Shown piece after piece: positions 19,592 to 34,171 of a DNA stretch of 64,000 nucleotides. Both the position numbers and the translations under genes were made by a program. Each line of letters starts with the position of its first letter. The first letter of the stretch is position 1. The notes under the pieces were generated by a model. That model had not been told where the DNA came from. It made no database searches and worked only from the letters and a program-made list of their open reading frames with translations. The stretch lies in sequence record MK308675.1; one strand, given 5' to 3'.

Positions 19592-20518
19592 ATGGCTTAC
19601 ACAGATTATAACTTCGACCCTACAGCCGAAGCGCCTGCCAACCTCATCTCTCAAGAGGTACATGCGTTGGACATGGCTACGTTTGTAGGCGTCATTCCTG
19701 ACCAAGGTGCCTTCTTTGAAAAGGGACTGGTCGTGGAAGCACGAGCGAGTTCGTCTGACCCTTGGGTTGAACTAACTCCTTATTTCGACTTTGTCTTCTC
19801 TCCTCCATTCGTAGATGCCGGTGCGAGAACAACCCGTAAACAGGTATTCTCTTACATCGTGTTGAATGAAGACCGAGGCGTCTATTCCGACGTCCGTTTA
19901 ACATACCAAGCAATCGGTAAGTACCGCGATTCAGAAATGTTCACTTTACTAAATGCAGCTACTTTCGACCGCAGCCTGTCTGCTGAATGGGTAGCGTTCT
20001 CGAGCTACATCGACACGATGTCGCACGTGACGCGCGAAGAGACATTGGTTGGGAAGGGTACTCTAGAAGTTCTAGCCGCAATGGTAGATAAGTGGACTGA
20101 AGCTATCCAGAACCCGCACGCTCAAGGGAAGAACCTAGGGCAAGACGTGGCTCGCTTAGAACAGAAAGTCGCCAAAGCACTAACGACAGATGCTTACGCC
20201 GAACTAACCGCACAGAATGACTTCAGTCAGGCAGTTGTTTCAGGTACAGCATACGAAGTGAAAGTTACTGACGACGAAGTAGAGCTACATAAAGGCATGC
20301 TTCTAATCAAGTCGTCAACAGGGGATGCGTATAGCGTAGACGTACTAGGCCGTAAAGCCGGCTCTACTGTGCACTCTGCTTTATTTAGCCAGAGCCATAA
20401 CAACGGGGTTTTAGGGACCGTAGCCGTCACTCGCTCTTCTGACGCAATTGTTATCCGCGTGACTCCTTCTGTCGCAGGCACCATGTACTATAAAACTGTT
20501 TCAGAAATCAGAGGCTAG
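19592..20518 (+). CDS. Baseplate/tail-fibre attachment protein, paralogue of 18583..19581
   Basis: FDPTAEAPANLI...PDQGAFF N-terminal domain. Confidence 0.7.
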   Translation: MAYTDYNFDPTAEAPANLISQEVHALDMATFVGVIPDQGAFFEKGLVVEARASSSDPWVELTPYFDFVFSPPFVDAGARTTRKQVFSYIVLNEDRGVYSDVRLTYQAIGKYRDSEMFTLLNAATFDRSLSAEWVAFSSYIDTMSHVTREETLVGKGTLEVLAAMVDKWTEAIQNPHAQGKNLGQDVARLEQKVAKALTTDAYAELTAQNDFSQAVVSGTAYEVKVTDDEVELHKGMLLIKSSTGDAYSVDVLGRKAGSTVHSALFSQSHNNGVLGTVAVTRSSDAIVIRVTPSVAGTMYYKTVSEIRG

Positions 20519-20523
20519 TAAAG

Positions 20524-22086
20524 ATGAATAATCTTCGTAAATACATAGGGCTAAAGTTAGCCCATTGGGGTAAGTTCGTGTTCCCTTACGGCGCGATGAC
20601 CGCCCAAAGAACCACTGACGGAGAAGACGGCGCCGCATTTATCGACTCCGACTTAAACGCTTTAAGACTGCATTTGGGCGGGACATATAAACAGCAAGCC
20701 TCGTTGGTTTATAATCCTGCGGCCATTGTCTCCGATACGAACGAAACCGTCCCAGGTATGCTCCGTGCGGTTGATACATCTGGCGGCCCTATTGTTGTAG
20801 ACCTAGACCCGACTCTTCCTGCGGGCTCAATGGTGGGCTATATTGACGTTACGGGTACGTGGGCAACGAATAAGTTTTCTCTAAGGGCAGCCGCGAATAT
20901 CCAAGGCGAAGCCGTTAAGGAGTATACCACGGCGTTTGGGTCCATTCAGTTAATCAAGCATGCGACTGCCGGCTGGATTCCATTTGGTGGCGGAGTAGGT
21001 GGCGGAGAAGGAGGCTCGGGAATTGGCCTCCCGGAAGGGGAGCTGGTCCATGGTACGTCCTATACCTTAAAGGTAGGTGTCCCTGCGTTACTCGACTTAG
21101 GCAAGACCTTCACAACGACCGGGTTTAACGTTCACTTTGAAAGAACGATGGATTACACTGCGGCCGATTGGGAATATACGCTGCCGAACGTCACATCGCT
21201 CCACTTACCTGAAGTCTATAACGTGAAAGCCGACCCCACGCAATCCGGTGACGCTGTGGCCGACCCAGAAGCCGGCCACTGGAAACTACCTGCCGACCCT
21301 GGACGTGCTATCCTAAAGCACCCTACCTTAAAGAAATGGATGCTCGTCCGTTTGGATGTCGCTCAAGAGTTCTTCCTTCAGATTGACGAAGAAGAATACG
21401 ACCACCCTGCGAGAGTACAGACATGGGCATCAGTCGATGCCGGTACGGGCGAAAGGACTATTCTGCCAAACGCCGAAATAAAACTAACAGACCTGACTTT
21501 AACTCTGCCTTTACCACCAAGTGGCGCAGTGGGAGATACGGTCGCATTCTACGACATATGGAAACTCGCTTCATTCGCGAATGTGATTCTAGAGGTAGAC
21601 GGCGCGCGGTCTTTAGACATGGACGGGAGAAGCTTTGCTATCGACGTCGATGGTGCCTCCGCCGAAATACAAGCCGTGCAACAGCGTGGCTGGGTAGCGG
21701 TCCGCTGGAACGTCGGCGCCGACCCGATGAATGACGAAGCCCCACATAGTAACTTAGTCGTAGGCAGCATAAGTCACGACTCTACTGACGACTACACGTC
21801 ATCCAATGGTTCAATCGAGCCAACTACGGAAGGCAGTGACGTCAAAGTAATGAATATTACCGAAGCAACCACAATTCAGCCCCCACTTTTGAAGTCAGGT
21901 CCTGTTACTTGGCTCACTTACAAAATCGTACAAGGCAACACAGCATACCCTGTGGAGTTTACTAGCGATTACGTAATCGTTGATGGGGTAGAGGCCTCCA
22001 AGGCACCTAACTCAGTTACGTGGGCCAGAGTTCTGGTCTCGGGTGACGGTAAGTACGATGTGTGGTTGTCTTCACGTCCTTTATAA
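20524..22086 (+). CDS. Tail fibre protein
   Basis: Two T4-long-fibre-like modules (LPAGSMVGYID...TNKFSL; LPLPPSGAVGDTVAFYD); Gly-rich linker. Confidence 0.65.
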   Translation: MNNLRKYIGLKLAHWGKFVFPYGAMTAQRTTDGEDGAAFIDSDLNALRLHLGGTYKQQASLVYNPAAIVSDTNETVPGMLRAVDTSGGPIVVDLDPTLPAGSMVGYIDVTGTWATNKFSLRAAANIQGEAVKEYTTAFGSIQLIKHATAGWIPFGGGVGGGEGGSGIGLPEGELVHGTSYTLKVGVPALLDLGKTFTTTGFNVHFERTMDYTAADWEYTLPNVTSLHLPEVYNVKADPTQSGDAVADPEAGHWKLPADPGRAILKHPTLKKWMLVRLDVAQEFFLQIDEEEYDHPARVQTWASVDAGTGERTILPNAEIKLTDLTLTLPLPPSGAVGDTVAFYDIWKLASFANVILEVDGARSLDMDGRSFAIDVDGASAEIQAVQQRGWVAVRWNVGADPMNDEAPHSNLVVGSISHDSTDDYTSSNGSIEPTTEGSDVKVMNITEATTIQPPLLKSGPVTWLTYKIVQGNTAYPVEFTSDYVIVDGVEASKAPNSVTWARVLVSGDGKYDVWLSSRPL

Positions 22087-22096
22087 GGAGTAAGGA

Positions 22097-25000
22097 ATGA
22101 ATCCCGAAGCCAAGCAAGTTGGCCATTTAGAGAGCGACGTTAAAGGTCGCTCTTTTGACCGATACAAAATAAAAGGCTCTCTGTCTTTAAACCCGCCTTT
22201 GGGCGGAGTGCAACCGCCTTTTCTAGCATATACGCAAAAGGATGGAAACCGCCAAATAGGCACTGTCTCACTTTGGATACGTCGAAGAGGTGTGGCAAAC
22301 AAGTCCCCCTCTACAACGGACGAGACTATATTTAGCCATCAGGCGTCATCGACTACGGCCTCTTACGGCGGAATGGGATTCGATTCCAGCGGCCATCTAG
22401 CCCACTTCATGTCTGACGGCACCGCTACGCAGTACGGCATGATAACGAAAGAGCGCTTTGTAGACTGTTCTCGCTTCTACCATATTGTGGTTCACTGGAA
22501 TACATGGATATCGGATGCTAACCAACGCATGCGCATGTTCGTTGACGGCAAGGAAATCAAATCGTTCATTCACTTTACCATGCCGCCGCTCGGCTACCAG
22601 GGGAAAGTGCATAATGCGGCTTATCCGTTTACCATCGGTCACGTTCCGGGACTGTCTGCTTATAATTACTTCGCTTTAAATGCCGAGATTGCAGACTTTG
22701 CCCTAGTTGATGGCCAGGCACTATTCCCGAAAGACTTTGGGCACTTTGATACCCAAGATAACTGGCGTCCAAGCTTCCCGAGCTTCGAAGGATGGGGACC
22801 TAACTCTCTGTTTTTGACCTGGGATAAACAGGCTAACGGAATGACCTCGCATGTCATTAATCGCCCTTCGCAATATGCCCCGGATGAGACCGACGATAAG
22901 AAGCCTATCTCTACGGTGCCTACGCCAGGTATTAAAGCCGACATCACCATACACAAGTCGTACAACCACACGTCAAACCAACATATGTTCTTGCAGGACT
23001 CAGTCCGCGGAGACGGCTGGTTCACTACGTTCTCAGAAGCTACGATTAACTCGCGCTACCATGGTCGACCTGCGCCGGCACCCAATGGGGAAGATGAACA
23101 CTTAAGGTTCAGCGGCTCCTTTAACTGGGAGAAACGTACGGATAATGAGCCGACATATTGGACACACTTCCTCTTTGCTACGGGACCCGAACACGGCATC
23201 AGTATCGTTCCTCACGATGGTACCGCCGCAGAAAAGAGAATTGAGCACGGTCTGGGGCGTAAGCCGGACTTAGCCATAAACGTGGTCCAGGAATCCGGAG
23301 CAAGCTACCCGATGTATACTTGGGCCAAAGGCTTTACGGATACTAACGACGATTCTCGCCTAAATCTCCATAATGGCTCAGGGGTCTTTACAGCACCTGG
23401 AGCAGACCACTGGCGAAACTCCTTAACGGACGAAACCTATTTCGGATTCGGTAGTGGGAGCGCGAACAACAGCGCATCTGGTAGAAACTTCATCACGTAT
23501 TTCTTTGCGTCCGTTCCCGGAAAGTCCCAGTACTTTAAATGGGAACATCGCGGGTCTAACACTAGGACGCGTTTTGAATGCGGTTTCCGCCCGCGCTTCT
23601 TCTTCTGGAAGACGGCAACGCCGTCGGGTGAGACTGCCGATGTCGGTGCTTGGGTGGTTGTTGACTGTCGAGACGGTACGGCTTGGGAATTCGACCGCAC
23701 GCGCGGCGGATACTACTCTTACAGTGCGACTTACTTCAATCCGGCTGAGGTAGACGATACCGGTTTCTCAATGGGCCACGACCTGGCCAGCATAGACGGC
23801 ATTATCATGGCCTTCGCGGACGAGTCGGACCTAAACCGCTGTGCCAAGTCAATAATGAACGATAACCGTGTTCGGCCGATTAACTTCCATGGCACGGCGG
23901 ACATCAGTGACGCAACTCCAGATAACCCAGGTGTAATCCTTAGCTGGAATAATGCTAACCGCTGGGCATCCGCAAACGGAGCAGCTCACCAGAGCCAGAG
24001 AGCCACGGAAGGCGGTTATCGCCTAGAGCTTTCACATACGCGTACCAATACCGCGGTAGGCTTAGGGCTTTCTCGCTCATTGCCGGAAAGCGGTAAGTGG
24101 TACTTTGAGGTAGATAGTTGCTATACGTTCGTTTTATGCGGCTACCAATTCATGGACGGTGCCCAGAACGGATACGACTACTACGACTACGTCAAAGATA
24201 CGCCGGGGTACGTATATGCTGGCGGCGTAAAGAACACACGCAGAAGTCACTACATTGCCTTGGATATGGATGCGCGGACATTACATGTCACTACCTCCGA
24301 CGGCAAGGTGTTCACTCTACCGGTTCCAGACGCCGACGAACGCACTACGGGCGATTATCAGTTCTTCGTATCCTCTAACGTCGCGTCTAAAGATACGGCC
24401 TCCATCAACTTAGGGCAGCGCCCTTTTGTAAATGAGATGCCAGTGGGCTACCGTCCTCTGAACGACCTCGGCAACTATCAGGAAAACTCGATTGAGCCTG
24501 AGAAATACTTCGACAACTTCATTTACAATGGCCTGCAAGCTTGCCATCAGGACATGTCGTCTACGTGGGCTTACTGGGGCGTGAAGTCTTTTGAAATCGA
24601 CGGCGAACTTTACCTAGCCCGCCGCCGCACGCACAGGATAGCGAACCCGCCGGTTGCCGCGGACTGGGTTAACCAAGGACATGTGGAAATATGGCTCTGG
24701 AACAGACATACTAAGAAGTTCAACGAACATCATACCTTGGCCATGCCTTCGGGCGGATACGCAATAGATGTGAAGTCGATAGATGGAGAGACGTATCTTT
24801 CTGCGGGGTCACACTACAACGGCTCACACGACATCACTGGCGGAGCATACCTCTTTAGATGGAACCGGACACACAAGAGATTCGAAACATTAGTTCGCCG
24901 CAATGAAGGTACCGGGCACATAGGAACCGAGATTTTCGACATCGATGAAGACCATTTGGGCTGGATAATGTCATCTCACCGCAACGGTACTGTCTTTGAC

Positions 25001-27802
25001 TTGGATTCTCACTTCTTTAAAGTGGAGAAACAAACAGGCAATGTTGTAAAGGTCCAGGCTATCCATACGGCCGGGGCACACGGCGTATCGACTGAGGTCT
25101 TTGAGGGAGAAACGTGGGTCACTATTTCGGAGTATCGTACTGGCGCAAATGGAGCTCAACTTGGAAACATTCCGCAAAGAAGTTGGCGCTATGACCCGAC
25201 CACCAGCGAGTTAGTGGCCGCCCCAGGTCTAACTACTGGACAGTATGCCGCAGTGGTACAGAATAAACTATTCGCGCACTCGGGTAACTTATATTGCCTG
25301 GTTTCATCTCGTCATACGGCCAACGTTTGGACGGAGTATACTAGCCTGGGCATGTTTAAGCTAAATGCCGCTAAAGACGGCTGGGACCAAATCACCTCTA
25401 TGGGCTCAATTGGCGCCAGCGAAGTAAGCGTACTGAAGAAAGATGACGGAGTTTACATCAGTGTCCCTTGTTATTACAACGGCACGTCAGTAGCATCCCG
25501 TCAGAACTACGTAGCGTTTAGCACGATTGCTTTCTTTAACCCGCAAACAGAGACGTTGATTTCCCACGAGACGTGGCGTGGTGTGGCTCAGACAGGTGCC
25601 GACTTCTTTGAGGACGATGGTGACTTCTATTTGGCCACGACGTCTACTTTGGACGATAGCTACAGCGCGACATGGATGGGCGTGCAAAAGTTTGCCGATA
25701 AGAACTTATCTGGATTCATTACTCGGGCCCAGTTCGGCAGTGACTCAGTCTACGACTCTGTGCGCATTGATGACGCCGACGGAGAGTACGTCCTGATGGT
25801 AGAACACGTGAAAGAATCTTCTCGCAGTCAAAGATTGTCAGACATTCAAATTCACGAGTACAACCCGACCACAAAGAGTATATCGCGCATAGGCACGCGC
25901 TCATCTCACGGCTGTCATGCCTTGGACGCTAAGAAGATTGGCGGCAAGTGGTACCTCGCGTCGGTCAATCATTCAAACGCCAGTACCGACACTACCGGCG
26001 GCGCCATTAACATTTATGTCTGGAATGAAACTACCAAAGACTTAGACTTCGTCATATCGTCACCCGTACACGGCTGTATAGAGGCGAAGTGGTTCGAGTC
26101 CGACGGTAAGACATATGTTTCCATTACGTCTAATCGCAGCGGTTCGAACTATGGACAGCCACTGGGTACGTTCTTGTTCGACCCAGCGTCTGTAGGTAGC
26201 GAGCTCACAGTCAAACCGACTTTGTCGGGCTCAGGCCATTTCGGTCTAGACCTTTATGAGTTCAAAGGAGAAACCTTCGGCTTTATCGGCGGTTCAGCCG
26301 CGTCTTCTTCTGGCGGCTATCATACGGCCTTTATAAAGTGGTATCCTGACTCGGAGACTTGGGGCGTTCATCAAAACCAAATCGCAGGTTCCAATATTCC
26401 GCATGGTTACGGTCGCTTCTTTGAAGCGAATGGACGACTGTATCTTCTTCTGGGCGCAGACCGCATCGGAGGCACACCAAACGCAACAACGGTTTGCCAG
26501 CTTTACCGTTACAGCGAAGCGACGCAGAGGATGTATTTCGTCAATGAGGTTCATGCTCCCGGAGCACGAAACTTCAATGTCGTTGAATACGAGGGCGACA
26601 TCTATGCGGCCATGGCTACGTGGGGTACGCCCGAGAGTAACAATCGCGGACTGGACCCGTATGACTGGACGGACAACCTCCTGCTTAAGTTTGATGCAGC
26701 AGACGAGACGTTCTACCTAGAAGCGGTTTATCCAGCGCACCATTCGGTTTGTCATAAGTTACACCTGATGAACGACGGTAATCTGTTCATAGCGGCGCAT
26801 AGCCACACGACGAACAATACCTTTAGTGCTCCTAACTTATGGCTACAAGTTAAGAAAGGTGCAGCGGCGATGCAGCACAACACCTTGACGGTCCCGACCG
26901 ACTTTGTCTGGCTCAAGTCGCTTTCTGGCCCTGCTAACTCACATAAGCAGTTCGCTAAGAAGGTAGGTTGGGAAAGGCAACTAACGTCCGACACGGCAGA
27001 CGCGGCAAGCTTTACTAACGGCCAGCATATTTTCGGTGTCTACAAACACGGAGTTCGTTTAGCGTATTCGTCATCAGCAAACGTCGCGCGCCTAGCTTAC
27101 TCGGTGTATGCCTGGAAAGCTGCCCCAGAGGCGGGCTTTGATTGTACAGTCCACGAAGGTAGTGGCGGCACACAGCATGCCCTCCCTTACGATATGGGCG
27201 ACAAGCAAGCCACGCTCGGCATCATTAAGAGCATCGATGTTTCCGGCAACTGGATGGTTCAAGGACCTATCTTGAAATCTGTAAACAACCGAGTGCTTTA
27301 CTTAAATGGTACCGGGGCCGCACAAGACAACTCATCCGACGGCTACATGTCTATGTTCTACAACGTAGGCCACTACGTTCTCGGGAACCAGGATGTGTCT
27401 AACGACCACGTAAACCGCAATGGGCAGAAATACATGGGCCTATGGTTCCGTAGTATAGAAGGCCAGGTTAAAGTGGGTCGCTATTCGGGCACGGGCCAAG
27501 TCGATGGCGATTTCGTTCCGCTGTCATTTAGCGCCCGCTGGATAATGATAAAGAGTGAAGCGAGTTCCAACAACTGGGCGGTCTATGACTTGAACAACGG
27601 AGCTAACGTTCGAAACGACGTGACGCACATCATCTATCCTAATCTCTCGCAGAGTATGGGAGAGCCGGTAACGGATAAGATAGAAGTAAGTGCCGGCGGT
27701 TTCCGCCCTATCGGTGCCGGTAACATCCATAACCAAAACGGACAGCCTTATGTCTTCATCGCCATAGCGGACGACCCGTTTGGTACATCTAACGCTTACT
27801 AA
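22097..27802 (+). CDS. Giant tail/receptor-binding protein: LamG/ConA, SPRY and 14 EAR/EPTP-like repeats
   Basis: TVSLWIRR...FYHIVVHW LamG; SGKWYFEV SPRY; 14 FExDGxxYL repeats; C-terminal YVFIAIADDPF. Confidence 0.75.
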   Translation: MNPEAKQVGHLESDVKGRSFDRYKIKGSLSLNPPLGGVQPPFLAYTQKDGNRQIGTVSLWIRRRGVANKSPSTTDETIFSHQASSTTASYGGMGFDSSGHLAHFMSDGTATQYGMITKERFVDCSRFYHIVVHWNTWISDANQRMRMFVDGKEIKSFIHFTMPPLGYQGKVHNAAYPFTIGHVPGLSAYNYFALNAEIADFALVDGQALFPKDFGHFDTQDNWRPSFPSFEGWGPNSLFLTWDKQANGMTSHVINRPSQYAPDETDDKKPISTVPTPGIKADITIHKSYNHTSNQHMFLQDSVRGDGWFTTFSEATINSRYHGRPAPAPNGEDEHLRFSGSFNWEKRTDNEPTYWTHFLFATGPEHGISIVPHDGTAAEKRIEHGLGRKPDLAINVVQESGASYPMYTWAKGFTDTNDDSRLNLHNGSGVFTAPGADHWRNSLTDETYFGFGSGSANNSASGRNFITYFFASVPGKSQYFKWEHRGSNTRTRFECGFRPRFFFWKTATPSGETADVGAWVVVDCRDGTAWEFDRTRGGYYSYSATYFNPAEVDDTGFSMGHDLASIDGIIMAFADESDLNRCAKSIMNDNRVRPINFHGTADISDATPDNPGVILSWNNANRWASANGAAHQSQRATEGGYRLELSHTRTNTAVGLGLSRSLPESGKWYFEVDSCYTFVLCGYQFMDGAQNGYDYYDYVKDTPGYVYAGGVKNTRRSHYIALDMDARTLHVTTSDGKVFTLPVPDADERTTGDYQFFVSSNVASKDTASINLGQRPFVNEMPVGYRPLNDLGNYQENSIEPEKYFDNFIYNGLQACHQDMSSTWAYWGVKSFEIDGELYLARRRTHRIANPPVAADWVNQGHVEIWLWNRHTKKFNEHHTLAMPSGGYAIDVKSIDGETYLSAGSHYNGSHDITGGAYLFRWNRTHKRFETLVRRNEGTGHIGTEIFDIDEDHLGWIMSSHRNGTVFDLDSHFFKVEKQTGNVVKVQAIHTAGAHGVSTEVFEGETWVTISEYRTGANGAQLGNIPQRSWRYDPTTSELVAAPGLTTGQYAAVVQNKLFAHSGNLYCLVSSRHTANVWTEYTSLGMFKLNAAKDGWDQITSMGSIGASEVSVLKKDDGVYISVPCYYNGTSVASRQNYVAFSTIAFFNPQTETLISHETWRGVAQTGADFFEDDGDFYLATTSTLDDSYSATWMGVQKFADKNLSGFITRAQFGSDSVYDSVRIDDADGEYVLMVEHVKESSRSQRLSDIQIHEYNPTTKSISRIGTRSSHGCHALDAKKIGGKWYLASVNHSNASTDTTGGAINIYVWNETTKDLDFVISSPVHGCIEAKWFESDGKTYVSITSNRSGSNYGQPLGTFLFDPASVGSELTVKPTLSGSGHFGLDLYEFKGETFGFIGGSAASSSGGYHTAFIKWYPDSETWGVHQNQIAGSNIPHGYGRFFEANGRLYLLLGADRIGGTPNATTVCQLYRYSEATQRMYFVNEVHAPGARNFNVVEYEGDIYAAMATWGTPESNNRGLDPYDWTDNLLLKFDAADETFYLEAVYPAHHSVCHKLHLMNDGNLFIAAHSHTTNNTFSAPNLWLQVKKGAAAMQHNTLTVPTDFVWLKSLSGPANSHKQFAKKVGWERQLTSDTADAASFTNGQHIFGVYKHGVRLAYSSSANVARLAYSVYAWKAAPEAGFDCTVHEGSGGTQHALPYDMGDKQATLGIIKSIDVSGNWMVQGPILKSVNNRVLYLNGTGAAQDNSSDGYMSMFYNVGHYVLGNQDVSNDHVNRNGQKYMGLWFRSIEGQVKVGRYSGTGQVDGDFVPLSFSARWIMIKSEASSNNWAVYDLNNGANVRNDVTHIIYPNLSQSMGEPVTDKIEVSAGGFRPIGAGNIHNQNGQPYVFIAIADDPFGTSNAY

Positions 27803-27812
27803 GGAGTAAGAA

Positions 27813-28232
27813 ATGCGTTCATTTTCTAAGAAATTTGGACGCGGCCCTGCCTCTCAAATCAGTAAAGGCACCAAGAGCGCGGGTTTCCGCGCCGATGGTG
27901 CGCTCCTGGTCACAGGCAGTGTCGTAAACACCCCTATCACTTTGCCCTATGCTGCAAACGTGGAGCTATCCTTAGCAGATAGCGATACGCAGCATCTAGA
28001 ACTAGCTGGCGATGTGCATATTACTGCGCCGGAGCTAAGAGTAGGTGGGTCCTGGAAAATCTATATAAGGCAAGATGCGACAGGCGGACACGATGTAACC
28101 TTCGGGGCTAACCTAAAGAACATCTATGGTACACCGGTGTTGTCTGCCGCAAACGCGACGACGTTAATGACCCTAATCGGTCGAGGGGATGGTAATTTTG
28201 ATTACACCCTAACGGCCGTTGCCACGATTTAA
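27813..28232 (+). CDS. Small tail-associated protein
   Basis: WKIYIRQDATGGHDVTF motif common in phage fibre C-terminal domains. Confidence 0.6.
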   Translation: MRSFSKKFGRGPASQISKGTKSAGFRADGALLVTGSVVNTPITLPYAANVELSLADSDTQHLELAGDVHITAPELRVGGSWKIYIRQDATGGHDVTFGANLKNIYGTPVLSAANATTLMTLIGRGDGNFDYTLTAVATI

Positions 28233-28252
28233 ACTAAACAAACGAGGTTAAC

Positions 28253-31200
28253 ATGCTTCTACCAAACATTGACGGTGGGGTTGTTAGTAAAGCAAGGGGC
28301 GATATCAATGTCGCCCCTCCTCTTTACGACCCGGAAGGCTCAATATTCCTAGATGGCCGCGACGGCGAAGGCGGCATGTTACAGTTCCGCCCGGAAACTC
28401 CATCGGACTCTACGAAATGGTGTTATTCTATCTGGATAAAGAATGGTGGGTTCAGCTACAGTGACCGGCACTTCACGCTGCTTGGCGCTGTAAACCAGAA
28501 CGGTATTCCGTCGGCACTTAACACTTCTCGGCTTGACGACAACATGGCATATATAGCCATCGACGATTCGAGCACCTTTAAGTTAAGTAATATTACGAAT
28601 AACGCAACTATTGACACCTACACTCTCCCGATTAAATTTAAAGACTCGGCCGACTGGCAGCATTTGTTTGTTCGTTTTGACACCACTCGCGACATACTAG
28701 AACTGTTCGTCAATGGGGTTTTCGCAGGCGATGTCGTCGTGGCTAAAGATATCTTGAGGTTCGGCGATACTTCCCACTATCACTACATCGGAGCAGATTC
28801 GTATTCTCGTACTCGAGATGCCTATTTTACAGACCCAGCACTTATCTTCGGGGAGGGGCAGCTGGATGTTAATGATTTTGGTTACACTGACGAACACGGC
28901 GTGTGGCGTCCGAAGGACCTAACGCAATCTTTACCGAAAAGTATTTGGAAAGGGAGCTCTTTTTACCTACAGCCGGGTAAAACGCCTAGGTTTACCGAAG
29001 AGGCCGAAGGCGGCATCGCGCATGGTCACAAATATCAACGTGGTTTCCAGAGATTCAGAGTCGGCTTTGAGCCAGACATGGTTATGGTTTTCTCTACCAA
29101 GTATGGTTTTGCCGAAGGCGCCGACTTTACCTTTAAAGAGTTGCCAGAACTCTCCATCAATGCATCAAACGAAGTGGGTGCCGTCGCGGACCCAAATGGG
29201 GTAAAATATTTCCACGATGGTTTTTCCATGGGAACTTCCGGGAACTTCCATAACGAGAACGGTTTCCCTTACTCTTACTTGGCCTTTAAGAAAGGAGCTA
29301 AGTACGGCATCGACATCATTCATTATACGGGTGACGGCCAAGACAATCGCCGGGTCGCCCACGAGCTGGAACAGCGCCCGCTTTCTACTTGGATTATTCC
29401 AGTCGACGTCAACGCCAACCGAACATATAACCATATCGAGTTAGGACCCAATCGCGTCATGACCCTTGAGGATGGCGAGCTAACCGCAAGCACGGGCTAC
29501 ATACGTAACCTGACGGACAAAGAAGTTGTGGTCAGCAACTCAGCGAACGTCAATGCCAGCGGCGTACGCTACGCAATGATTTGTTTTGGTAATAAACAGG
29601 GCGTTATGTCCGTGGAACATCTTGTTGGTCCCGGCAATAGTCTACATTCTGGGTCCACTGAGACGCCGATTGATTTCCACGGGCTGGTTGCATTTACTCG
29701 CCGGATGGCAGGTAGCGGTAATCGCGCACTAGACATTATTACCAACGACTCCGTGCGTTCTATTTCGAGCGCGTACGCGGTGGCCTATCCGAACAACAGT
29801 GCCAATAACCCCCAGTTCTTCAGCAGCAATCAGTTAAACTGGTTAACGACCGTCGCCGAAACAATCGGCTATGCCGCTAGGGCAGATACGCGGTCAATCT
29901 TTAAGGCATGTAAGTCTGTAGTCAACGACGTTCAGTTAATCCCTCGTCGTATGTCGACGCATGATGCTTTGTCCGACGATAGTCCTTTCAGGAACTTAGG
30001 CGTCTGGAAAAACGCAGAGACGAATAGCACTTCGAGCTTCCACAGCGGCGGGCTTGGGGCGCACCTAGGCAATGGCGCGACGGCACAGGCCAAATGGAGC
30101 AAGTCGATACGCGGACGCTGTTACTGGGAAGTCAACGTCGAGTCCTCAGGCAGCGGCTACTACTATTTGGTCGGCTTAACGGGCAACCCGGGCTACACTT
30201 CGGCTGCTTACATCGACTGGTCGTACTATGTCGTTTATTACGCTAATAATGGAACAATACTCAGTTCTCCTCCAGGCACTGGCGGTGAGCAATTAGGGAC
30301 GACAACCGGCGGCGGTCATAGACATATTTACAGTATGTTGTGGGACCCGGAAATACGTACGCTTAAAATGTATCGTGACGGAAGCCTTCTTTTCGAACAA
30401 GACATGAGTGCTTATGATTTACCGGACTCGATATATCCGTACATACGCCACGCCTCGGGAGCACAATCCACAGTCTTCGCGATGAACGACGGGCGCTTCC
30501 CGTTTTTGTATCCTGAGCTTGCCGATAATGCACCTTCTCTTATGGAGGATGGCCTTAAGCCAATCGCGGACATAAAGAACAGCCAGGTAGCTTTTAAGCC
30601 GGTTGCGTACAAAGCGGGCGATAACTCGGGCCATCTGTTCTCTTATACTGGACAGCCGGCATCCACGACATGTAACATGTTCGAGGCAGACGGTAAACTG
30701 TATCTCTATAAGGCCAACTTCGGTGATGGTTCGACGCACCACGTCAACGATGAGCTAATTCGCATTAATGAGGACGGCTCTTTCGAAGTAGTGCTGGAAG
30801 GGCAGTACGGCAGCGCCACCTATGACACTCGCCATTTCGAGTCCAACGGCAGACATTTCCTCATTGTCTGCGACTACAATAAGGGGGCCTGGGGGAGCGC
30901 TAACACAGGTATCGGCATAATCACTTACGAGTTTCATCCTAAGACAGAAACGCTAACGACTATCTCGGTTTTACCTAACGGTGGCGTGAACAGGCTATCG
31001 CTTTACGAGTTTAACGGTGAACTGTTCTTAGCTCGTTGTGTGTGGGGCACCTCGTATGAAAACATCCGCATTTACAAATGGCAGCCGGACCACTTAACCT
31101 GGAAGGAAGGAGGCTACGAGGCTCTTACAAATGCCACCGCGGCACAGTTCTGGGAACGTGACGGAACACTCTATCTGTCTTGTGCTGCTTTGATGACGGC

Positions 31201-32620
31201 GGGCCGTAAGAGTGCGACGTATCGAGTCGACCCGGAAACAGGGAACCTTGCTCTCGTGTTCGCAGGGCCTAACGTAAACCAAGCGCGCTCTTTGGCAGTC
31301 AATACGGCTAAAGACGGTAACACCTACATGTTGATGTCATACACGGGAACGAGCAACAAGCTCTTCAAGTGGGACCCTGTTAACGAGGACTGGATTGAGG
31401 ATGTCGCGCCTGGGTCCTGGGCAAACTGCTACGGAATGAGCACCTTCAAAGAAGGAGAAGAGGTTTACTTCGCAATGGCGAATGCGGAATATACTTCCTC
31501 AAACGTACTGCATCACTTTGACCCGGTTACGAAGGGGCTGACTCCTATCGTTACGGCGGCTTCACAAAACGCACACGATGCTCAAAGCATTAAGTATCGC
31601 GGCGTGTGGTATACGGCATTCGCGAACCACCGCACGTCGAGCAGCTATGCCCAAGGCTACATCACTGTGGTGACCTCTAAAGTTGACCCCGACACAGGAA
31701 TATTGAAAGCAGGTCGCTTCATTGAGATGCCTAAGGGCGCTGACTTAATGTGGGTTAAGGACAGAACCACACCGGGCATTGCTCATCGTTTGTACAGTCC
31801 TAAGATGGTAGATAAGGAACTCTATCCGGGCCTAAACCTACCTGCTGGAAATTCGGCCACCGTAGACTGGCACGATGACGGCGTGTTGTTACAAGGCGGT
31901 TATACCGGACACAATACCGGCAACATTAACCACGTGGCATACTTCTGGAAAACTGGCCCTGAGTACGGCATTGATTTCTCTTTGCAAACCTCGGGGCCGG
32001 ATGGAACAACCGCGGTGACACACGAACACAATTGCGGCGACATCCCGGAAGTTTTGATGATAAAAGGACTAACGAATAACTCATCGTGGCATGTCAGGTT
32101 TGAGGATTTTGCGGATACCGATACCTTGCTCTTGGACACGAACACCGTAAGGTATACGTTGCCTGGCGCTAAGTATTGGGATAAGGCAAACTTCAATGAG
32201 AAGTCCGTATCGCTGTTCGCAGCGAATGCAATTGGTGTCAACCAAGGATTCGCAATGTTGGCTATTCGTTCCGTCCCGGGCTATTCAAAAACCGGTTTTT
32301 ATTGGGGCAATGGCAACGCGTCGGGTATCGATTTTAACCTTGGATTTAAACCAGCATGGATGTTGGTCAAGATTGAAAACGTCGTCGGTAACGATTGGGT
32401 AATCTTCGATTCGTCGCGTTCACCGTTTAACAAGGACGGGATGGCGAGATTGCGAGTTAACGGTACTCAGGTTGAGGACGCAGCGGAAAATAACGACATC
32501 TTCTTTACGTCAACTGGCTTTAAGTGTGACGGTACGGGAAGTTCCATGAACCGACTGAATGCTAAGTACACATTCATCGCGTTTGCGGAAAACCCGTTCG
32601 AACACACCAACGCTCGATAA
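28253..32620 (+). CDS. Giant tail/receptor-binding protein, paralogue with 7 EAR/EPTP-like repeats
   Basis: WCYSIWIK...DWQHLFV LamG; GRCYWEV SPRY; 7 repeats; C-terminal YTFIAFAENPF..NAR. Confidence 0.75.
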   Translation: MLLPNIDGGVVSKARGDINVAPPLYDPEGSIFLDGRDGEGGMLQFRPETPSDSTKWCYSIWIKNGGFSYSDRHFTLLGAVNQNGIPSALNTSRLDDNMAYIAIDDSSTFKLSNITNNATIDTYTLPIKFKDSADWQHLFVRFDTTRDILELFVNGVFAGDVVVAKDILRFGDTSHYHYIGADSYSRTRDAYFTDPALIFGEGQLDVNDFGYTDEHGVWRPKDLTQSLPKSIWKGSSFYLQPGKTPRFTEEAEGGIAHGHKYQRGFQRFRVGFEPDMVMVFSTKYGFAEGADFTFKELPELSINASNEVGAVADPNGVKYFHDGFSMGTSGNFHNENGFPYSYLAFKKGAKYGIDIIHYTGDGQDNRRVAHELEQRPLSTWIIPVDVNANRTYNHIELGPNRVMTLEDGELTASTGYIRNLTDKEVVVSNSANVNASGVRYAMICFGNKQGVMSVEHLVGPGNSLHSGSTETPIDFHGLVAFTRRMAGSGNRALDIITNDSVRSISSAYAVAYPNNSANNPQFFSSNQLNWLTTVAETIGYAARADTRSIFKACKSVVNDVQLIPRRMSTHDALSDDSPFRNLGVWKNAETNSTSSFHSGGLGAHLGNGATAQAKWSKSIRGRCYWEVNVESSGSGYYYLVGLTGNPGYTSAAYIDWSYYVVYYANNGTILSSPPGTGGEQLGTTTGGGHRHIYSMLWDPEIRTLKMYRDGSLLFEQDMSAYDLPDSIYPYIRHASGAQSTVFAMNDGRFPFLYPELADNAPSLMEDGLKPIADIKNSQVAFKPVAYKAGDNSGHLFSYTGQPASTTCNMFEADGKLYLYKANFGDGSTHHVNDELIRINEDGSFEVVLEGQYGSATYDTRHFESNGRHFLIVCDYNKGAWGSANTGIGIITYEFHPKTETLTTISVLPNGGVNRLSLYEFNGELFLARCVWGTSYENIRIYKWQPDHLTWKEGGYEALTNATAAQFWERDGTLYLSCAALMTAGRKSATYRVDPETGNLALVFAGPNVNQARSLAVNTAKDGNTYMLMSYTGTSNKLFKWDPVNEDWIEDVAPGSWANCYGMSTFKEGEEVYFAMANAEYTSSNVLHHFDPVTKGLTPIVTAASQNAHDAQSIKYRGVWYTAFANHRTSSSYAQGYITVVTSKVDPDTGILKAGRFIEMPKGADLMWVKDRTTPGIAHRLYSPKMVDKELYPGLNLPAGNSATVDWHDDGVLLQGGYTGHNTGNINHVAYFWKTGPEYGIDFSLQTSGPDGTTAVTHEHNCGDIPEVLMIKGLTNNSSWHVRFEDFADTDTLLLDTNTVRYTLPGAKYWDKANFNEKSVSLFAANAIGVNQGFAMLAIRSVPGYSKTGFYWGNGNASGIDFNLGFKPAWMLVKIENVVGNDWVIFDSSRSPFNKDGMARLRVNGTQVEDAAENNDIFFTSTGFKCDGTGSSMNRLNAKYTFIAFAENPFEHTNAR

Positions 32621-32725: not shown

Positions 32726-33715
32726 ATGTCAATCCAAACGCTATACAAATACCAGTTCGACAAGTACGGAAATAACTCCGCTAACTTGATTCCAAATGAA
32801 CCGGTGAAGTTCGATACTCCGCGTATCGTTCCTTTCGTACTGAGAGAAGGTAACTTCTATCAGAAAGACTTAACTATCCGAGATAAAGCAGACAACAGTT
32901 TATTGGTCTTAGGTACCGACTATAACCTAGTTGGCCTAGATGCTGACCTTACAGCAGAGACAGGCTTAACTGTAGCAGGCGGTATCGAGTTAGCCGATAA
33001 AACATTCATCGGTGAATTGGAAGTTACCTATCGCTGCGTAGGTGGACCGCAAGGCGAATCGCGCGCTCTTTATCTGGAACTAATCGAAGCAATCACAAAC
33101 GCAGGAACTAACCCTAGTGTTCTTTGGGAATCCATCATTGGTCGCCCTCAGCGCTTCCCGCCTGAAATCCACTCACACTTACTGAGCGAACTGACTGAAC
33201 TTGAGAAACTCTATCAGTCAATGCAGGACATGACTAATGCAATCGTCAACTCTAAGCCGATGTATGGTTCCAACCAAAACATCTTAGAACAGATTGAAGG
33301 CATCATTCAAATCCAGGCAGCGATGCAGTTAGCACTTAACCGTGTGGCTACAGGCGTAGGCTCAGTCGCGTTAATTAACCAAGTGCGTGATAATCTCGCT
33401 AACGTTCATAAGCAGTTCGATAAGACGACCAACACCGTTGGCGTTACTTGGGCAGACGTAGCAGTTATCCCTGAAGCGGACTTCAACAACGCACGCGGCG
33501 TCATCTCTATTGTTGATGCAACCGACTCCATGCAGATGGATTTCGATATTTCGTGGACTACCGCGAAAGACCCGTCTTACACACACTATGGCCATATCGG
33601 CACAGATGAACTCATCAACGCGATGCAAGTCATTAAACAGTCAGGTAACGTTGTAGTTCAAATTCGAACCACTAAAGACGCAACCGTCAAGACTAAATTT
33701 ACTCACCTGCTTTAA
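32726..33715 (+). CDS. Baseplate/tail attachment protein (same N-terminal family as 18583..19581)
   Basis: YQFDKYGNNSANLI...G.FY...G.DY and WESIIGRPQRFPPEIHSH motifs. Confidence 0.7.
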   Translation: MSIQTLYKYQFDKYGNNSANLIPNEPVKFDTPRIVPFVLREGNFYQKDLTIRDKADNSLLVLGTDYNLVGLDADLTAETGLTVAGGIELADKTFIGELEVTYRCVGGPQGESRALYLELIEAITNAGTNPSVLWESIIGRPQRFPPEIHSHLLSELTELEKLYQSMQDMTNAIVNSKPMYGSNQNILEQIEGIIQIQAAMQLALNRVATGVGSVALINQVRDNLANVHKQFDKTTNTVGVTWADVAVIPEADFNNARGVISIVDATDSMQMDFDISWTTAKDPSYTHYGHIGTDELINAMQVIKQSGNVVVQIRTTKDATVKTKFTHLL

Positions 33716-33724
33716 GGAGCACCC

Positions 33725-34171
33725 ATGAAGATTACTTTTCATTTCTTCGATAACCGCGCAATCGGTTCGCTACTTATCAAAGCACGCCTTTCCGAGCATT
33801 TCTCTCATGTGGGAATGGAGTTTGAGAACGGCGCGTTTATTCACAGCACTATGCTGCACGGCACCGTCATGCAGAAACTTAGCGACCAGCCAACTGAGCC
33901 TCTTGCGTCGGTAACTATCGATGTAGACGAAGAAGCGTACATGGAAGCGTACGAATGGGCAGTTCATCAAGTGGGTGGCAAATACGACTACAAGGGAATC
34001 ATTGGTTTCATGTTCGCTAAGAAATGGAACGATGAGAATGCGTTCTTCTGTTCTGAGCTAGGACGTAAAGTATTTGAAATCGCGACAGGGAAAATCCTGA
34101 AGTATTATAATTTGGTTACGCCCGGCGAATTACGCATGCTTGTAGCTATGCACAATCTAGACGGCAAGTAA
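33725..34171 (+). CDS. Permuted papain-like (YiiX/YaeF, NlpC/P60 superfamily) enzyme
   Basis: FSHVGM (His), GGKYDY, FFCSEL (Cys) in permuted order. Confidence 0.8.
   Translation: MKITFHFFDNRAIGSLLIKARLSEHFSHVGMEFENGAFIHSTMLHGTVMQKLSDQPTEPLASVTIDVDEEAYMEAYEWAVHQVGGKYDYKGIIGFMFAKKWNDENAFFCSELGRKVFEIATGKILKYYNLVTPGELRMLVAMHNLDGK

What the first reader, a model, noticed from the sequence alone, without database searches (positions are those of the whole stretch)
24533..31720. EAR/EPTP-like beta-propellers inserted at the same site in two paralogous tail proteins (14 versus 7 blades)
Seen: both giant proteins share a LamG-SPRY scaffold and a C-terminal ...AFAExPF domain. In the common marine-phage version the motif F.xxxY.G is followed directly by ...PDxVWxK. 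Here it is interrupted by about 780 aa in gene 22097 (about 24533-26880; 14 repeats such as FEIDGELYLA and FFEDDGDFYLA) and about 370 aa in gene 28253 (about 30620-31720; 7 repeats such as FESNGRHFLI and YEFNGELFLA). Known: EAR/EPTP repeats form 7-bladed propellers, best known from animal LGI1/ADGRV1 adhesion proteins. Inference: modular receptor-binding cassettes of one or two propellers plugged into a permissive loop, possibly binding host surface proteins or eukaryotic mucus/tissue.
Basis: partly seen in the sequence, partly recalled or inferred. Interest (0 to 1): 0.72.

Follow-up and report, generated by a model that had tools for sequence, protein, structure and literature searches.

The report
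Propeller domains nested in phage tail-fibre proteins
Two neighbouring giant tail-fibre-like proteins of a jumbo Vibrio phage carry seven-bladed propeller domains of the EAR/EPTP family (one copy in one protein, two in the other) nested in the same surface loop of their end domain. A related phage has one of these proteins with the loop empty, so the propellers behave as add-on modules, most likely for binding.

Summary
The window is Vibrio phage vB_VmeM-Yong, a 290-kb jumbo phage. Gene 22097-27802 (1901 aa) has 14 repeats of about 55 aa at residues 826-1594. Gene 28253-32620 (1455 aa) has 7 repeats of about 50 aa at residues 805-1152.

Both arrays interrupt the C-terminal DUF7483 domain (PF24299) at one loop. 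In 83 insert-less relatives that loop is usually 13-14 residues.

The repeats belong to the EPTP/EAR family. Pfam PF03736 scores 38.7 bits on the 14-blade insert (cut-off 21). Orthologous inserts score 33-163 bits. All 50 retrieved relatives that I scanned carry EPTP. An AlphaFold model of the 7-blade insert (pTM 0.78) matches human LGI1 EPTP best (TM 0.61-0.73).

Vibrio phage GR7B is syntenic. Its orthologue of the 14-blade protein has no insert and an intact DUF7483. Its orthologue of the 7-blade protein keeps the propeller. Two metagenomic contigs carry the double-propeller form.

Not shown: receptor binding, presence in the virion, two 7-bladed rings rather than another arrangement, and gain versus loss. 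Binding to animal mucus has no support. This is a new variant of a known kind, of moderate interest.

The parts
22097..27802 (+). Gene p1 (QAX96161, 1901 aa). Giant tail-fibre-like protein: N-terminal LamG-like region, partial first DUF7483-like copy (aa 364-526), SPRY-like region, then a split C-terminal DUF7483 carrying a 14-blade insert.
   Evidence: ORF, translation. Pfam DUF7483 151.5 bits and EPTP 31.2 bits on the whole protein. phrog_19943 virion structural protein and phrog_24898 tail fiber protein. 100% identical to MK308674.
24437..24532 (+). p1 aa 781-812: the first segment of the split DUF7483, ending in the motif YFDNFIYNG, directly upstream of the insert.
   Evidence: Matches positions 2-43 of an HMM built from insert-less domains (weak on its own, 2.4 bits). 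BLASTP is collinear up to p1 812 = GR7B_00153 781, which lies inside that protein's unbroken Pfam DUF7483 (769-1082).
24572..25747 (+). p1 aa 826-1217: blades 1-7, the proposed first EPTP-type propeller.
   Evidence: Blade envelopes 826-884, 888-938, 941-993, 997-1048, 1054-1106, 1108-1163, 1166-1214. The best Pfam EPTP stretch is in blade 1.
25748..26887 (+). p1 aa 1218-1597: blades 8-14, the proposed second EPTP-type propeller.
   Evidence: Blade envelopes 1220-1272, 1273-1326, 1327-1375, 1381-1431, 1438-1489, 1491-1549, 1552-1594. Blades 1-7 score best against blades 8-14 at offset 0 (261 versus 205 or less; blade 2 versus blade 9 = 96).
26888..27799 (+). p1 aa 1598-1901: the remainder of the split DUF7483 domain.
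   Evidence: Pfam DUF7483 profile 25-330 (106 bits on the fragment). BLASTP p1 1596-1900 = GR7B_00153 790-1088.
27813..28232 (+). Small gene (139 aa) between the two giant genes. The position is conserved in GR7B (141 aa) and L003 (140 aa).
   Evidence: phrog_4549 tail fiber C-terminal module, E 1.5e-9. The L003 orthologue carries PF26209. Synteny.
28253..32620 (+). Gene p2 (QAX96163, 1455 aa): paralogue of p1 with a 7-blade insert in the same loop.
   Evidence: ORF, translation. Pfam DUF7483 138.2 bits. hhalign of p1-type versus p2-type scaffolds E 7.7e-65. End-to-end orthologues are GR7B_00155 and L003 13937-18277.
30560..30619 (+). p2 aa 770-789: the first segment of the split DUF7483, ending in VAFKPVAYKAG.
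   Evidence: Motif position. Aligned with FTATTYTG of GR7B_00155 and with the end of the p1-type scaffold. Predicted as a beta-strand (model residues 7-11).
30620..31726 (+). p2 aa 790-1158: 7-blade EPTP-type propeller insert.
   Evidence: Blade envelopes 805-853, 857-911, 914-952, 961-1008, 1015-1057, 1059-1105, 1107-1152. AlphaFold2 with alignment A5: pLDDT 74.5, pTM 0.78, four-stranded blades, blade 5 at low confidence. The top seven Foldseek PDB hits are LGI1 EPTP. The orthologous inserts pass the Pfam EPTP threshold (33.3 and 116.8 bits). The Yong insert itself gives no Pfam hit.
31727..32617 (+). p2 aa 1159-1455: the remainder of the split DUF7483 domain.
   Evidence: Pfam DUF7483 profile 27-330, 123 bits on the fragment.

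Best explanation
p1 and p2 are paralogous tail-fibre-like structural proteins of a jumbo Vibrio myophage. Their last domain, DUF7483, is shared with fibre and virion proteins of many marine phages. In p1 and p2 it is split after its first short segment by a nested domain. That nested domain is one seven-bladed beta-propeller of the EPTP/EAR family in p2, and two such propellers in tandem in p1. The two ends of a closed propeller lie side by side, so it can sit in a loop without breaking the host domain.

I propose that the propellers are extra ligand-binding heads displayed from the far end of the fibre. They would add or change what the phage binds on the Vibrio cell surface during adsorption. 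I also propose that they can be gained, duplicated or lost as whole units.

Shown: family membership, blade counts, the insertion site, that the host domain is one domain, paralogy, and that an orthologue exists without the insert.

Inferred: two separate 7-bladed rings, presence in the virion, and the binding function with its target.
For: Identity of the genome: 100% match to Vibrio phage vB_VmeM-Yong.

EPTP family:
- Pfam PF03736 scores 38.7 bits, E 1.1e-9, on the p1 insert (cut-off 21).
- Orthologues score 33.3 bits (GR7B_00155), and 163.2, 116.8 and 129.4 bits (L003 and L004).
- A profile of the three Yong propellers finds 466 representatives at E<=1e-3 among 1.84 billion proteins. All 50 of those I scanned carry Pfam EPTP.
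- A profile of Yong plus microbial relatives retrieves animal TSPEAR proteins at about 1e-90 to 1e-140.

Fold: AlphaFold2 gives pTM 0.78 with four-stranded blades. The Foldseek PDB top seven are all human LGI1 EPTP (E about 1e-12, TM 0.61-0.62 by query length, 0.72-0.73 against the EPTP-only chains). Six-bladed Kelch domains follow at TM about 0.46.

Blade counts with cross-validated HMMs and shuffles.

Site and split domain.

Paralogy.

Empty-site orthologue: GR7B_00153 (1089 aa) aligns to p1 11-812 and 1596-1900 with only a short loop between.

Rarity: none of 70 DUF7483 ORFs in 71 IMG/VR loci has a propeller, and 60 have the domain in one piece.

Tail-fibre context:
- PHROG tail fiber and virion structural hits for p1, p2 and their neighbours.
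- Homologues are annotated as tail fiber, fiber or virion structural protein in Pelagibacter and cyanophage records.
- A GPW_gp25 baseplate gene lies upstream in GR7B.
- Neighbouring genes are orthologous to pir03 genes that sit next to its PAAR-motif and puncturing-device genes.

Faster divergence of the propeller than of its flanks: Yong versus GR7B is 19% against 25-32%. This fits a surface that tracks a variable ligand.
Against: - There are no virion proteomics, structure or binding data for any of these proteins.
- The Yong p2 insert itself gets no Pfam EPTP hit. Its assignment rests on orthologues, profiles and the model.
- The AlphaFold alignment was made of EPTP-family sequences, so the LGI1 match is not fully independent. 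Blade 5 is at low confidence.
- A PDB sequence search with the three-propeller profile returned a designed Kelch protein (3e-6) and a Kelch protein (0.009), not LGI1.
- The 14-blade insert was not modelled.
- The model of the split-domain construct failed (pLDDT 36), so the nested topology rests on homology alone.
Confidence: 0.62

Rival explanations
1. The inserts are Kelch-type propellers, like the Kelch-like proteins common in jumbo phages, and not EPTP/EAR.
For: The PDB sequence search with the three-propeller profile gives a designed Kelch protein at 3e-6 and KBTBD10 Kelch at 0.009, and no LGI1. Kelch domains and jumbo-phage Kelch-like proteins follow the top hits in Foldseek.
Against: No Pfam Kelch family is reported for the inserts at E<=10, while EPTP passes its threshold. 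All 50 scanned relatives are EPTP. The orthologues score up to 163 bits on EPTP. There are seven blades per unit, against six in the Kelch matches. LGI1 EPTP outranks every Kelch structure (TM 0.61-0.73 versus about 0.46). Both families are beta-propellers, so this is a question of the nearest family only.
Confidence: 0.05
2. The propellers are enzymes, for example a polysaccharide-degrading or lactonase-like activity that clears a path to the cell surface, and not passive binding modules.
For: Propeller enzymes occur in phage tail spikes (established knowledge: endosialidases). The L003 and L004 orthologues show sub-threshold matches to the 7-bladed Lactonase family (20.0 and 20.7 bits, cut-off 21.7). 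Three of the 50 relatives also hit Lactonase.
Against: The Lactonase matches are below threshold and overlap far stronger EPTP matches. No catalytic activity is known for the EPTP family (my knowledge). No conserved candidate catalytic residues were looked for here.
Confidence: 0.1
3. The propellers bind surfaces of the animal hosts of the vibrios (coral or bivalve mucus or tissue) and hold the phage where its bacteria live.
For: Animal EPTP/EAR proteins are extracellular adhesion or ligand proteins (LGI1-ADAM22 complexes; TSPEAR relatives). GR7B came from an oyster hatchery and infects a coral and shellfish pathogen.
Against: The closest relatives of the phage propellers are bacterial or metagenomic proteins with PKD, Big, CARDB and Peptidase_S74 domains. 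One of them sits in a plainly bacterial chromosomal context. The cassette sits in the end domain of a fibre, where host-cell receptors are normally bound. There is no sequence signal of recent transfer from animals: the inserts have the same GC and GC3 as the host gene.
Confidence: 0.07
4. The identical site does not reflect two insertions into a permissive loop. There was one ancestral insertion before p1 and p2 duplicated, followed by tandem duplication of the propeller in p1 and a later clean loss in GR7B_00153. A variant is copying between the paralogues by recombination in the flanking DUF7483 sequence. This rivals only the evolutionary part of the reading.
For: The scaffolds are paralogous right up to the insert. 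p1 1262-1900 aligns collinearly with p2 796-1454. Yong p1 and L003 p1 align end to end through both propellers, so the double propeller has one origin. GR7B and L003 are the closest pair in 6 of 7 syntenic segments, while L003, L004 and Yong all have the double propeller. That makes a loss in GR7B the more parsimonious reading.
Against: The loop of GR7B_00153 has the ordinary length of insert-less relatives. That is what an ancestral empty site would look like. In the p1 N-terminal scaffold, Yong and GR7B are the closest pair. Fibre genes are mosaic. Pairwise propeller scores could not resolve the origin.
Confidence: 0.5

Closest known systems
EPTP/EAR seven-bladed beta-propeller (Pfam PF03736; LGI1 EPTP domain, PDB 5Y2Z, 5Y31, 8Y6B; TSPEAR; ADGRV1)
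   Same: Same family by the Pfam threshold (p1 and the orthologues), by reciprocal profile search and by best structural match. Seven repeats of about 50 aa per unit. An extracellular ligand-binding role is the family's known function.
   Different: Here the propeller sits in a bacteriophage structural protein and is nested inside another domain, whereas LGI1 and TSPEAR carry it as a C-terminal domain. It is very divergent: 9-10% identity to LGI1 in the structural alignment. The ligand is unknown.
DUF7483-ending fibre and virion proteins of marine phages (PF24299; for example the Pelagibacter phage HTVC011P tail fiber protein, cyanophage SS120-1 virion structural protein, PHROG 19943 and 24898)
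   Same: Same C-terminal domain and the same LamG/SPRY-type scaffold. These are the host proteins of the insert.
   Different: Those proteins have the domain in one piece with a loop of about 13-14 residues. None of 70 IMG/VR examples has a propeller.
Orthologues: Vibrio phage vB_VcorM_GR7B GR7B_00153 and GR7B_00155 (MT366760); metagenomic contigs L003 (SRR13169030) and L004 (ERR13986111)
   Same: Same gene order (giant gene, gene of about 140 aa, giant gene). GR7B_00155 and the L003 1446-aa protein have the 7-blade insert at the same site. The L003 1827-aa and L004 1820-aa proteins have the double insert.
   Different: GR7B_00153 has no insert at all. Identities to Yong are only 19-32%.
Tandem (not nested) DUF7483 plus EPTP proteins on a 220-kb contig (L077, P0157)
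   Same: The same two families are combined in giant genes of what looks like another jumbo phage. There are about 13-14 EPTP repeats.
   Different: There the EPTP array follows a complete DUF7483 (432-746). It does not interrupt it.
Propeller 'platform' of the Staphylococcus phage phi11 receptor-binding protein Gp45 (PMC4901313)
   Same: A beta-propeller used as a module of a phage host-recognition device.
   Different: It is five-bladed, from an unrelated family, in line with the fibre and not nested in a loop, and from a siphophage of a Gram-positive host.
'EAR-like protein' ORF 199 of jumbo Vibrio phage vB_VhaM_pir03 (PMC7765460; MT811961)
   Same: An earlier automatic annotation (InterPro IPR009039) of EAR repeats in a related jumbo vibriophage. 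A 548-aa protein of the same length ranks third in the BFVD fold search.
   Different: It is a stand-alone 548-aa protein next to a 19-kb gene, not in a DUF7483 fibre. Pfam EPTP is below threshold (18.1 bits versus 21).

Membership tests
EPTP/EAR repeat family (Pfam PF03736) | Score at or above the Pfam gathering threshold (21 bits) | tested here: met
   The p1 insert scores 38.7 bits, E 1.1e-9. Orthologues score 33.3 (GR7B_00155), and 163.2, 116.8 and 129.4 bits (L003 and L004). The Yong p2 insert alone gives no hit and is assigned through its orthologues.
EPTP/EAR repeat family (Pfam PF03736) | Repeats of about 45-55 aa in multiples of seven | tested here: met
   14 repeats in p1 and 7 in p2. 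Cross-built HMMs and shuffles support this. Insert lengths in the orthologues (373, 381, about 723 and about 750 aa) fit 7 or 14 blades.
EPTP/EAR repeat family (Pfam PF03736) | Reciprocal search: a profile of the candidates retrieves family members | tested here: met
   466 hits at E<=1e-3. All 50 scanned carry PF03736. A mixed profile retrieves animal TSPEAR proteins.
EPTP/EAR repeat family (Pfam PF03736) | Closed seven-bladed beta-propeller fold like LGI1 EPTP | tested here: met
   AlphaFold2 model of the p2 insert: pTM 0.78, six blades well defined and one at low confidence. The Foldseek top seven are LGI1 EPTP, TM 0.61-0.73. Caveat: the input alignment consisted of EPTP-family sequences. 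The p1 insert was not modelled.
EPTP/EAR repeat family (Pfam PF03736) | Binds a protein ligand on a propeller face, as LGI1 binds ADAM22 | not testable with these tools
   No binding data exist. The ligand is unknown.
DUF7483 (Pfam PF24299) | Score above the gathering threshold (27 bits) | tested here: met
   151.5 bits for p1 and 138.2 bits for p2.
DUF7483 (Pfam PF24299) | One contiguous domain of about 330 positions | tested here: not met
   In p1 and p2 the match starts at profile position 19-27 after the insert. The first positions lie before the insert. It is contiguous in GR7B_00153 (profile 1-330). So this is a split member of the family.
Kelch repeat propellers | Match to Pfam Kelch models; usually six blades | tested here: not met
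   No Kelch family is reported for the inserts at E<=10. There are seven blades per unit. Kelch structures rank below LGI1. There are weak PDB sequence matches to Kelch designs.
Phage tail fibre / receptor-binding protein | Homology to annotated fibre proteins and location in a tail or baseplate gene module | tested here: met
   phrog_24898 tail fiber protein and phrog_19943 virion structural protein. Neighbouring genes hit tail fiber PHROGs. Homologues are annotated as tail fiber or fiber. A gp25-like gene lies upstream in GR7B. These are annotation-level names, not experiments.
Phage tail fibre / receptor-binding protein | Physically present at the tail of the virion and contacts the host receptor | not tested
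   I found no proteomics or structure for Yong or its relatives in the paper library.

The most novel reading that the evidence does not exclude
Whole EPTP propellers act as countable, removable binding units. Related jumbo vibriophages would carry 0, 7 or 14 blades in the same loop of orthologous fibre proteins and so set what they adsorb to. That might include surfaces of the animals their vibrios colonise. This would be a new way of diversifying phage receptor-binding proteins, by nesting domains within a domain. It would also be the first function for EPTP propellers outside animals.
Probability: 0.12. Interest if true: 0.75.

Novelty: new variant of a known kind. Interest (0 to 1): 0.45.

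Why it matters
The EPTP/EAR propeller has been studied almost only in animal proteins (LGI1 in epilepsy, ADGRV1 and TSPEAR in hearing). Here it appears as a nested module in phage fibre proteins, and hundreds of microbial relatives exist. That gives the family a microbial setting and a likely ligand-binding use.

For phage biology, two things are useful. One is a clean orthologue pair with and without a 780-residue insert in a loop that is normally about 14 residues. The other is the single and double versions in neighbouring paralogues. Together they are a natural example of how receptor-binding proteins can be rebuilt by inserting domains as well as by swapping ends.

The practical value is modest: better annotation of DUF7483 proteins and of 'hypothetical' giant genes in jumbo vibriophages. 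Automatic pipelines already tag EPTP on the 1901-aa protein (precomputed Pfam), so the family hit itself is not new. I found no paper on EPTP propellers in phage fibres in the library searched.

Tried and rejected
- A single-sequence AlphaFold2 run of p2 aa 763-1455, meant to test the split domain directly, gave pLDDT 36 and is unusable.
- I tested offline a combined alignment of EPTP and DUF7483 relatives for that construct.
- tblastn of the p2 insert against 50,697 phage records found only the four Yong isolates. The word-based search with the p1 insert found only itself. Both are too insensitive at 20-25% identity.
- phmmer of the p1 insert against PDB sequences found nothing. The three-sequence profile found Kelch designs and not LGI1.
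- Blade register: MAFFT and summed blade scores put the p2 blades one blade out of step with the second propeller of p1 (offset 8 scores 261; other offsets reach up to 229). The signal is too weak to interpret.
- Origin of the cassette: every phage propeller scores higher against regular bacterial EPTP arrays than against the other phage propellers. This reflects how regular those arrays are, so it says nothing about descent.
- No DNA-level tandem repeat and no compositional difference marks the inserts. They are therefore old and not recent insertions.
- Literature searches for EPTP or EAR with phage, and for DUF7483, found nothing relevant beyond one table entry in the pir03 paper.

Full report
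WHAT THE WINDOW IS. The region 22097-32620 is 100% identical to Vibrio phage vB_VmeM-Yong. Four isolates are in the collection, with genomes of about 278-291 kb and Vibrio mediterranei as host. All genes there are annotated 'hypothetical protein'. The two genes of the finding are p1 (22097-27802, 1901 aa, QAX96161) and p2 (28253-32620, 1455 aa, QAX96163). A 139-aa gene lies between them.

- Aligning the segments between successive 'hydrophobic-x-x-D/N-G-x-x-Y/F-L' motifs gives 21 units with one shared pattern: 14 in p1 (about 55 aa each) and 7 in p2 (about 50 aa each).
- HMM envelopes put the units at p1 826-1594 and p2 805-1152.
- As a non-circular control, I built a blade HMM from p2 alone. 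It finds seven hits in p1, all inside the insert.
- An HMM from p1 alone finds five hits in p2, all inside that insert, and none in the insert-less orthologue described below.
- 200 shuffles of either insert give 0.015 hits on average.

WHAT THE INSERTS ARE.
- Pfam's EPTP model (PF03736) passes its 21-bit threshold on p1: 31.2 bits on the whole protein and 38.7 bits on the insert alone. No other propeller family is reported.
- The p2 insert alone gives no Pfam hit.
- Its end-to-end orthologues do. GR7B_00155 scores 33.3 bits. The 1446-aa protein of contig L003 scores 116.8 bits. The double-insert orthologues in L003 and L004 score 163.2 and 129.4 bits.
- A profile of the three Yong propellers, searched against 1.84 billion representative proteins, gave 466 hits at E<=1e-3 and 170 at E<=1e-10.
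- I scanned 50 of the best non-self hits and all 50 carry Pfam EPTP. They often also carry PKD, Big, CARDB, FG-GAP, Laminin_G_3 or Peptidase_S74 domains.
- The named or placeable hits are bacterial: a Chloroflexota CARDB protein, an uncultured 'bacterium', and a gene among purine-synthesis and grpE genes. One is from a choanoflagellate.
- A profile of Yong plus small microbial relatives retrieves animal TSPEAR proteins at about 1e-90 to 1e-140. This ties the microbial set to the animal family.
- AlphaFold2 of p2 aa 778-1172, with an alignment of these relatives, gave pLDDT 74.5 and pTM 0.78. The model has seven groups of four strands, and the fifth group has low confidence where the alignment was empty.
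- The seven best Foldseek matches in the PDB are all human LGI1 EPTP (E about 1e-12 to 1e-11; TM 0.61-0.62 by query length, 0.72-0.73 against the EPTP-only chains). Six-bladed Kelch domains come next at TM about 0.46.
- The viral structure library returns the protein itself first. Next come a fragment of what appears to be p1, a 548-aa protein (the length of the pir03 'EAR-like' ORF) and a 1457-aa protein (the length of GR7B_00155). Kelch-like proteins of poxviruses and jumbo phages follow.
- Caveats: the alignment fed to AlphaFold was made of EPTP sequences. A PDB sequence search with the small profile found Kelch designs and not LGI1.

WHERE THE INSERTS SIT.
- Pfam DUF7483 (PF24299) matches the C-terminus of both proteins, but only from profile position 19-27 onward.
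- I built an HMM from the last domain of insert-less relatives. It aligns p1 781-822 to positions 2-43 and p1 1588-1675 to positions 35-120. The domain is therefore interrupted after its first short segment.
- In 83 motif pairs from insert-less relatives, the loop between the two flanking motifs is 11-21 residues in 75 cases, with a mode of 13-14. In p1 and p2 the loop holds about 790 and about 375 residues.
- The decisive comparator is Vibrio phage vB_VcorM_GR7B (MT366760), which has the same gene order.
- GR7B_00153 (1089 aa) aligns with p1 11-812 and, after a short loop, with p1 1596-1900. Pfam DUF7483 covers it in one piece, profile 1-330 at residues 769-1082.
- So the two flanks of the p1 insert are one domain in an orthologue, and that orthologue lacks the insert.
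- GR7B_00155 (1457 aa) aligns with p2 end to end through the propeller.
- The direct structural test of the nested topology failed, so the topology rests on homology.

PARALOGY AND SCAFFOLD.
- Profiles of the N-terminal 770-810 residues of the p1-type and p2-type proteins align collinearly over 726 columns, right up to the insertion point (hhalign probability 100%, E 7.7e-65).
- Laminin_G_3 and SPRY pass Pfam thresholds in GR7B_00155. SPRY passes in the L003 p2-type and L004 p1-type proteins.
- Neither family is detected directly in the Yong proteins.
- A weak PDB match of the p1-type profile is to the SPRY domain of DDX1 (E 0.28).

DISTRIBUTION.
- The nested form is rare. None of 70 DUF7483 ORFs in 71 IMG/VR loci has a propeller. 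None of 28 word-search relatives covers the insert.
- It occurs in Yong, GR7B (p2-type only), contig L003 (1827-aa double form, a 140-aa gene, and a 1446-aa single form, in the same order as Yong) and contig L004 (1820-aa double form).
- A 220-kb contig (L077) combines the same two families the other way round: the EPTP array follows a complete DUF7483.

HISTORY (UNRESOLVED).
- Yong p1 and L003 p1 align end to end through both propellers, so the double insert arose once.
- GR7B and L003 are the closest pair in six of seven syntenic segments. That would make the empty site of GR7B a loss.
- Against this, the GR7B loop has the ordinary length, and in the p1 scaffold Yong and GR7B are the closest pair.
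- Blades 1-7 match blades 8-14 best in register, which fits a duplicated seven-blade unit.
- The inserts have the same GC and GC3 as the host genes and show no DNA-level repeats. They are old.
- The identical site in the two paralogues is explained at least as well by inheritance or recombination between paralogues as by two independent insertions.

HOW IT PROBABLY WORKS.
- The genes lie in a block of tail-fibre-like genes.
- Their relatives are annotated as tail fiber, fiber or virion structural proteins.
- The block is close to baseplate genes in related phages.
- The end domain of a fibre is where receptors are usually bound. EPTP propellers are ligand-binding domains in animals, and propellers serve in other phage recognition devices, such as the phi11 Gp45 platform (PMC4901313).
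- The propeller also diverges faster than its flanks.
- I therefore take the inserts to be extra binding heads for adsorption to Vibrio cells.
- This step is inferred. An enzymatic role or binding to animal surfaces cannot be excluded, but neither has positive evidence.

NOVELTY. The family hit is already produced by automatic annotation: precomputed Pfam marks EPTP on the 1901-aa protein, and an 'EAR-like protein' is listed in a table of the pir03 paper (PMC7765460). What I did not find described in the paper library searched is the rest. That covers the nested architecture, the 0/7/14-blade series among orthologues and paralogues, and the link between DUF7483 fibres and EPTP propellers.

Noticed in passing
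window 34188-38522 (+): A third giant gene (1444 aa) is built almost entirely of CBM_5_12-type carbohydrate/chitin-binding repeats (Pfam 118 bits, 6 stretches passing). It matches tail-fibre phrog_9851. A chitin-binding array on a Vibrio phage fibre may be of interest in its own right.
   Followed up: partly
window 20524-22086 (aa 408-519) and 27813-28232 (aa 74-128): The gene directly upstream of each giant gene ends in the same small module (C-terminus of tail-fibre phrog_4549). The L003 orthologues carry PF26209 Phage_phiTE_241_C. The module could be an adaptor or an assembly factor paired with each fibre gene.
   Followed up: partly
window 33725-34171 (+): A 148-aa ORF in the middle of the fibre module matches phrog_1128, an enoyl-CoA hydratase/carnitine racemase-like family (E 1.5e-14). 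That is an odd family to find there.
   Followed up: no
window 18583-19581, 19592-20518, 32726-33715 (+): Three genes of about 310-330 aa share an N-terminal module with virion structural and tail protein PHROGs (2163, 13857, 7557). They may share an attachment domain with different ends.
   Followed up: no
L077 8001-20557 (ENA ERZ27315067 contig, 219,847 bp): Three consecutive giant genes combine DUF7483 and EPTP in tandem order. In the first, DUF7483 is complete at 432-746 and is followed by about 13-14 EPTP repeats (535 bits). This is a second architecture for the same pair of families, probably in another jumbo phage.
   Followed up: partly
p1 aa 826-1594 versus p2 aa 805-1152: The blades of p2 score best against those of p1 at an offset of 8, that is one blade out of step with the second propeller. 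MAFFT makes the same shift. It could be a circular permutation or different unit boundaries. The signal is weak.
   Followed up: partly
L076 8001-11105 (ENA ERZ25074195 contig): The best non-phage relative of the Yong propellers is a 1034-aa bacterial protein with seven EPTP repeats and a Peptidase_S74 (endosialidase chaperone) domain. It lies among housekeeping genes (purL-like, SAICAR synthase, dCTP deaminase, grpE).
   Followed up: partly
window 20001-32000: The fibre-gene block has a higher G+C content (about 0.51) than the window as a whole (0.468). The inserts do not differ from their host genes in GC or GC3.
   Followed up: yes
L078 6946-8592 (Vibrio phage pir03, MT811961): The published 'EAR-like protein' (548 aa) scores only 18.1 bits on Pfam EPTP, below the 21-bit threshold. 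It lies just upstream of a 19-kb gene.
   Followed up: partly
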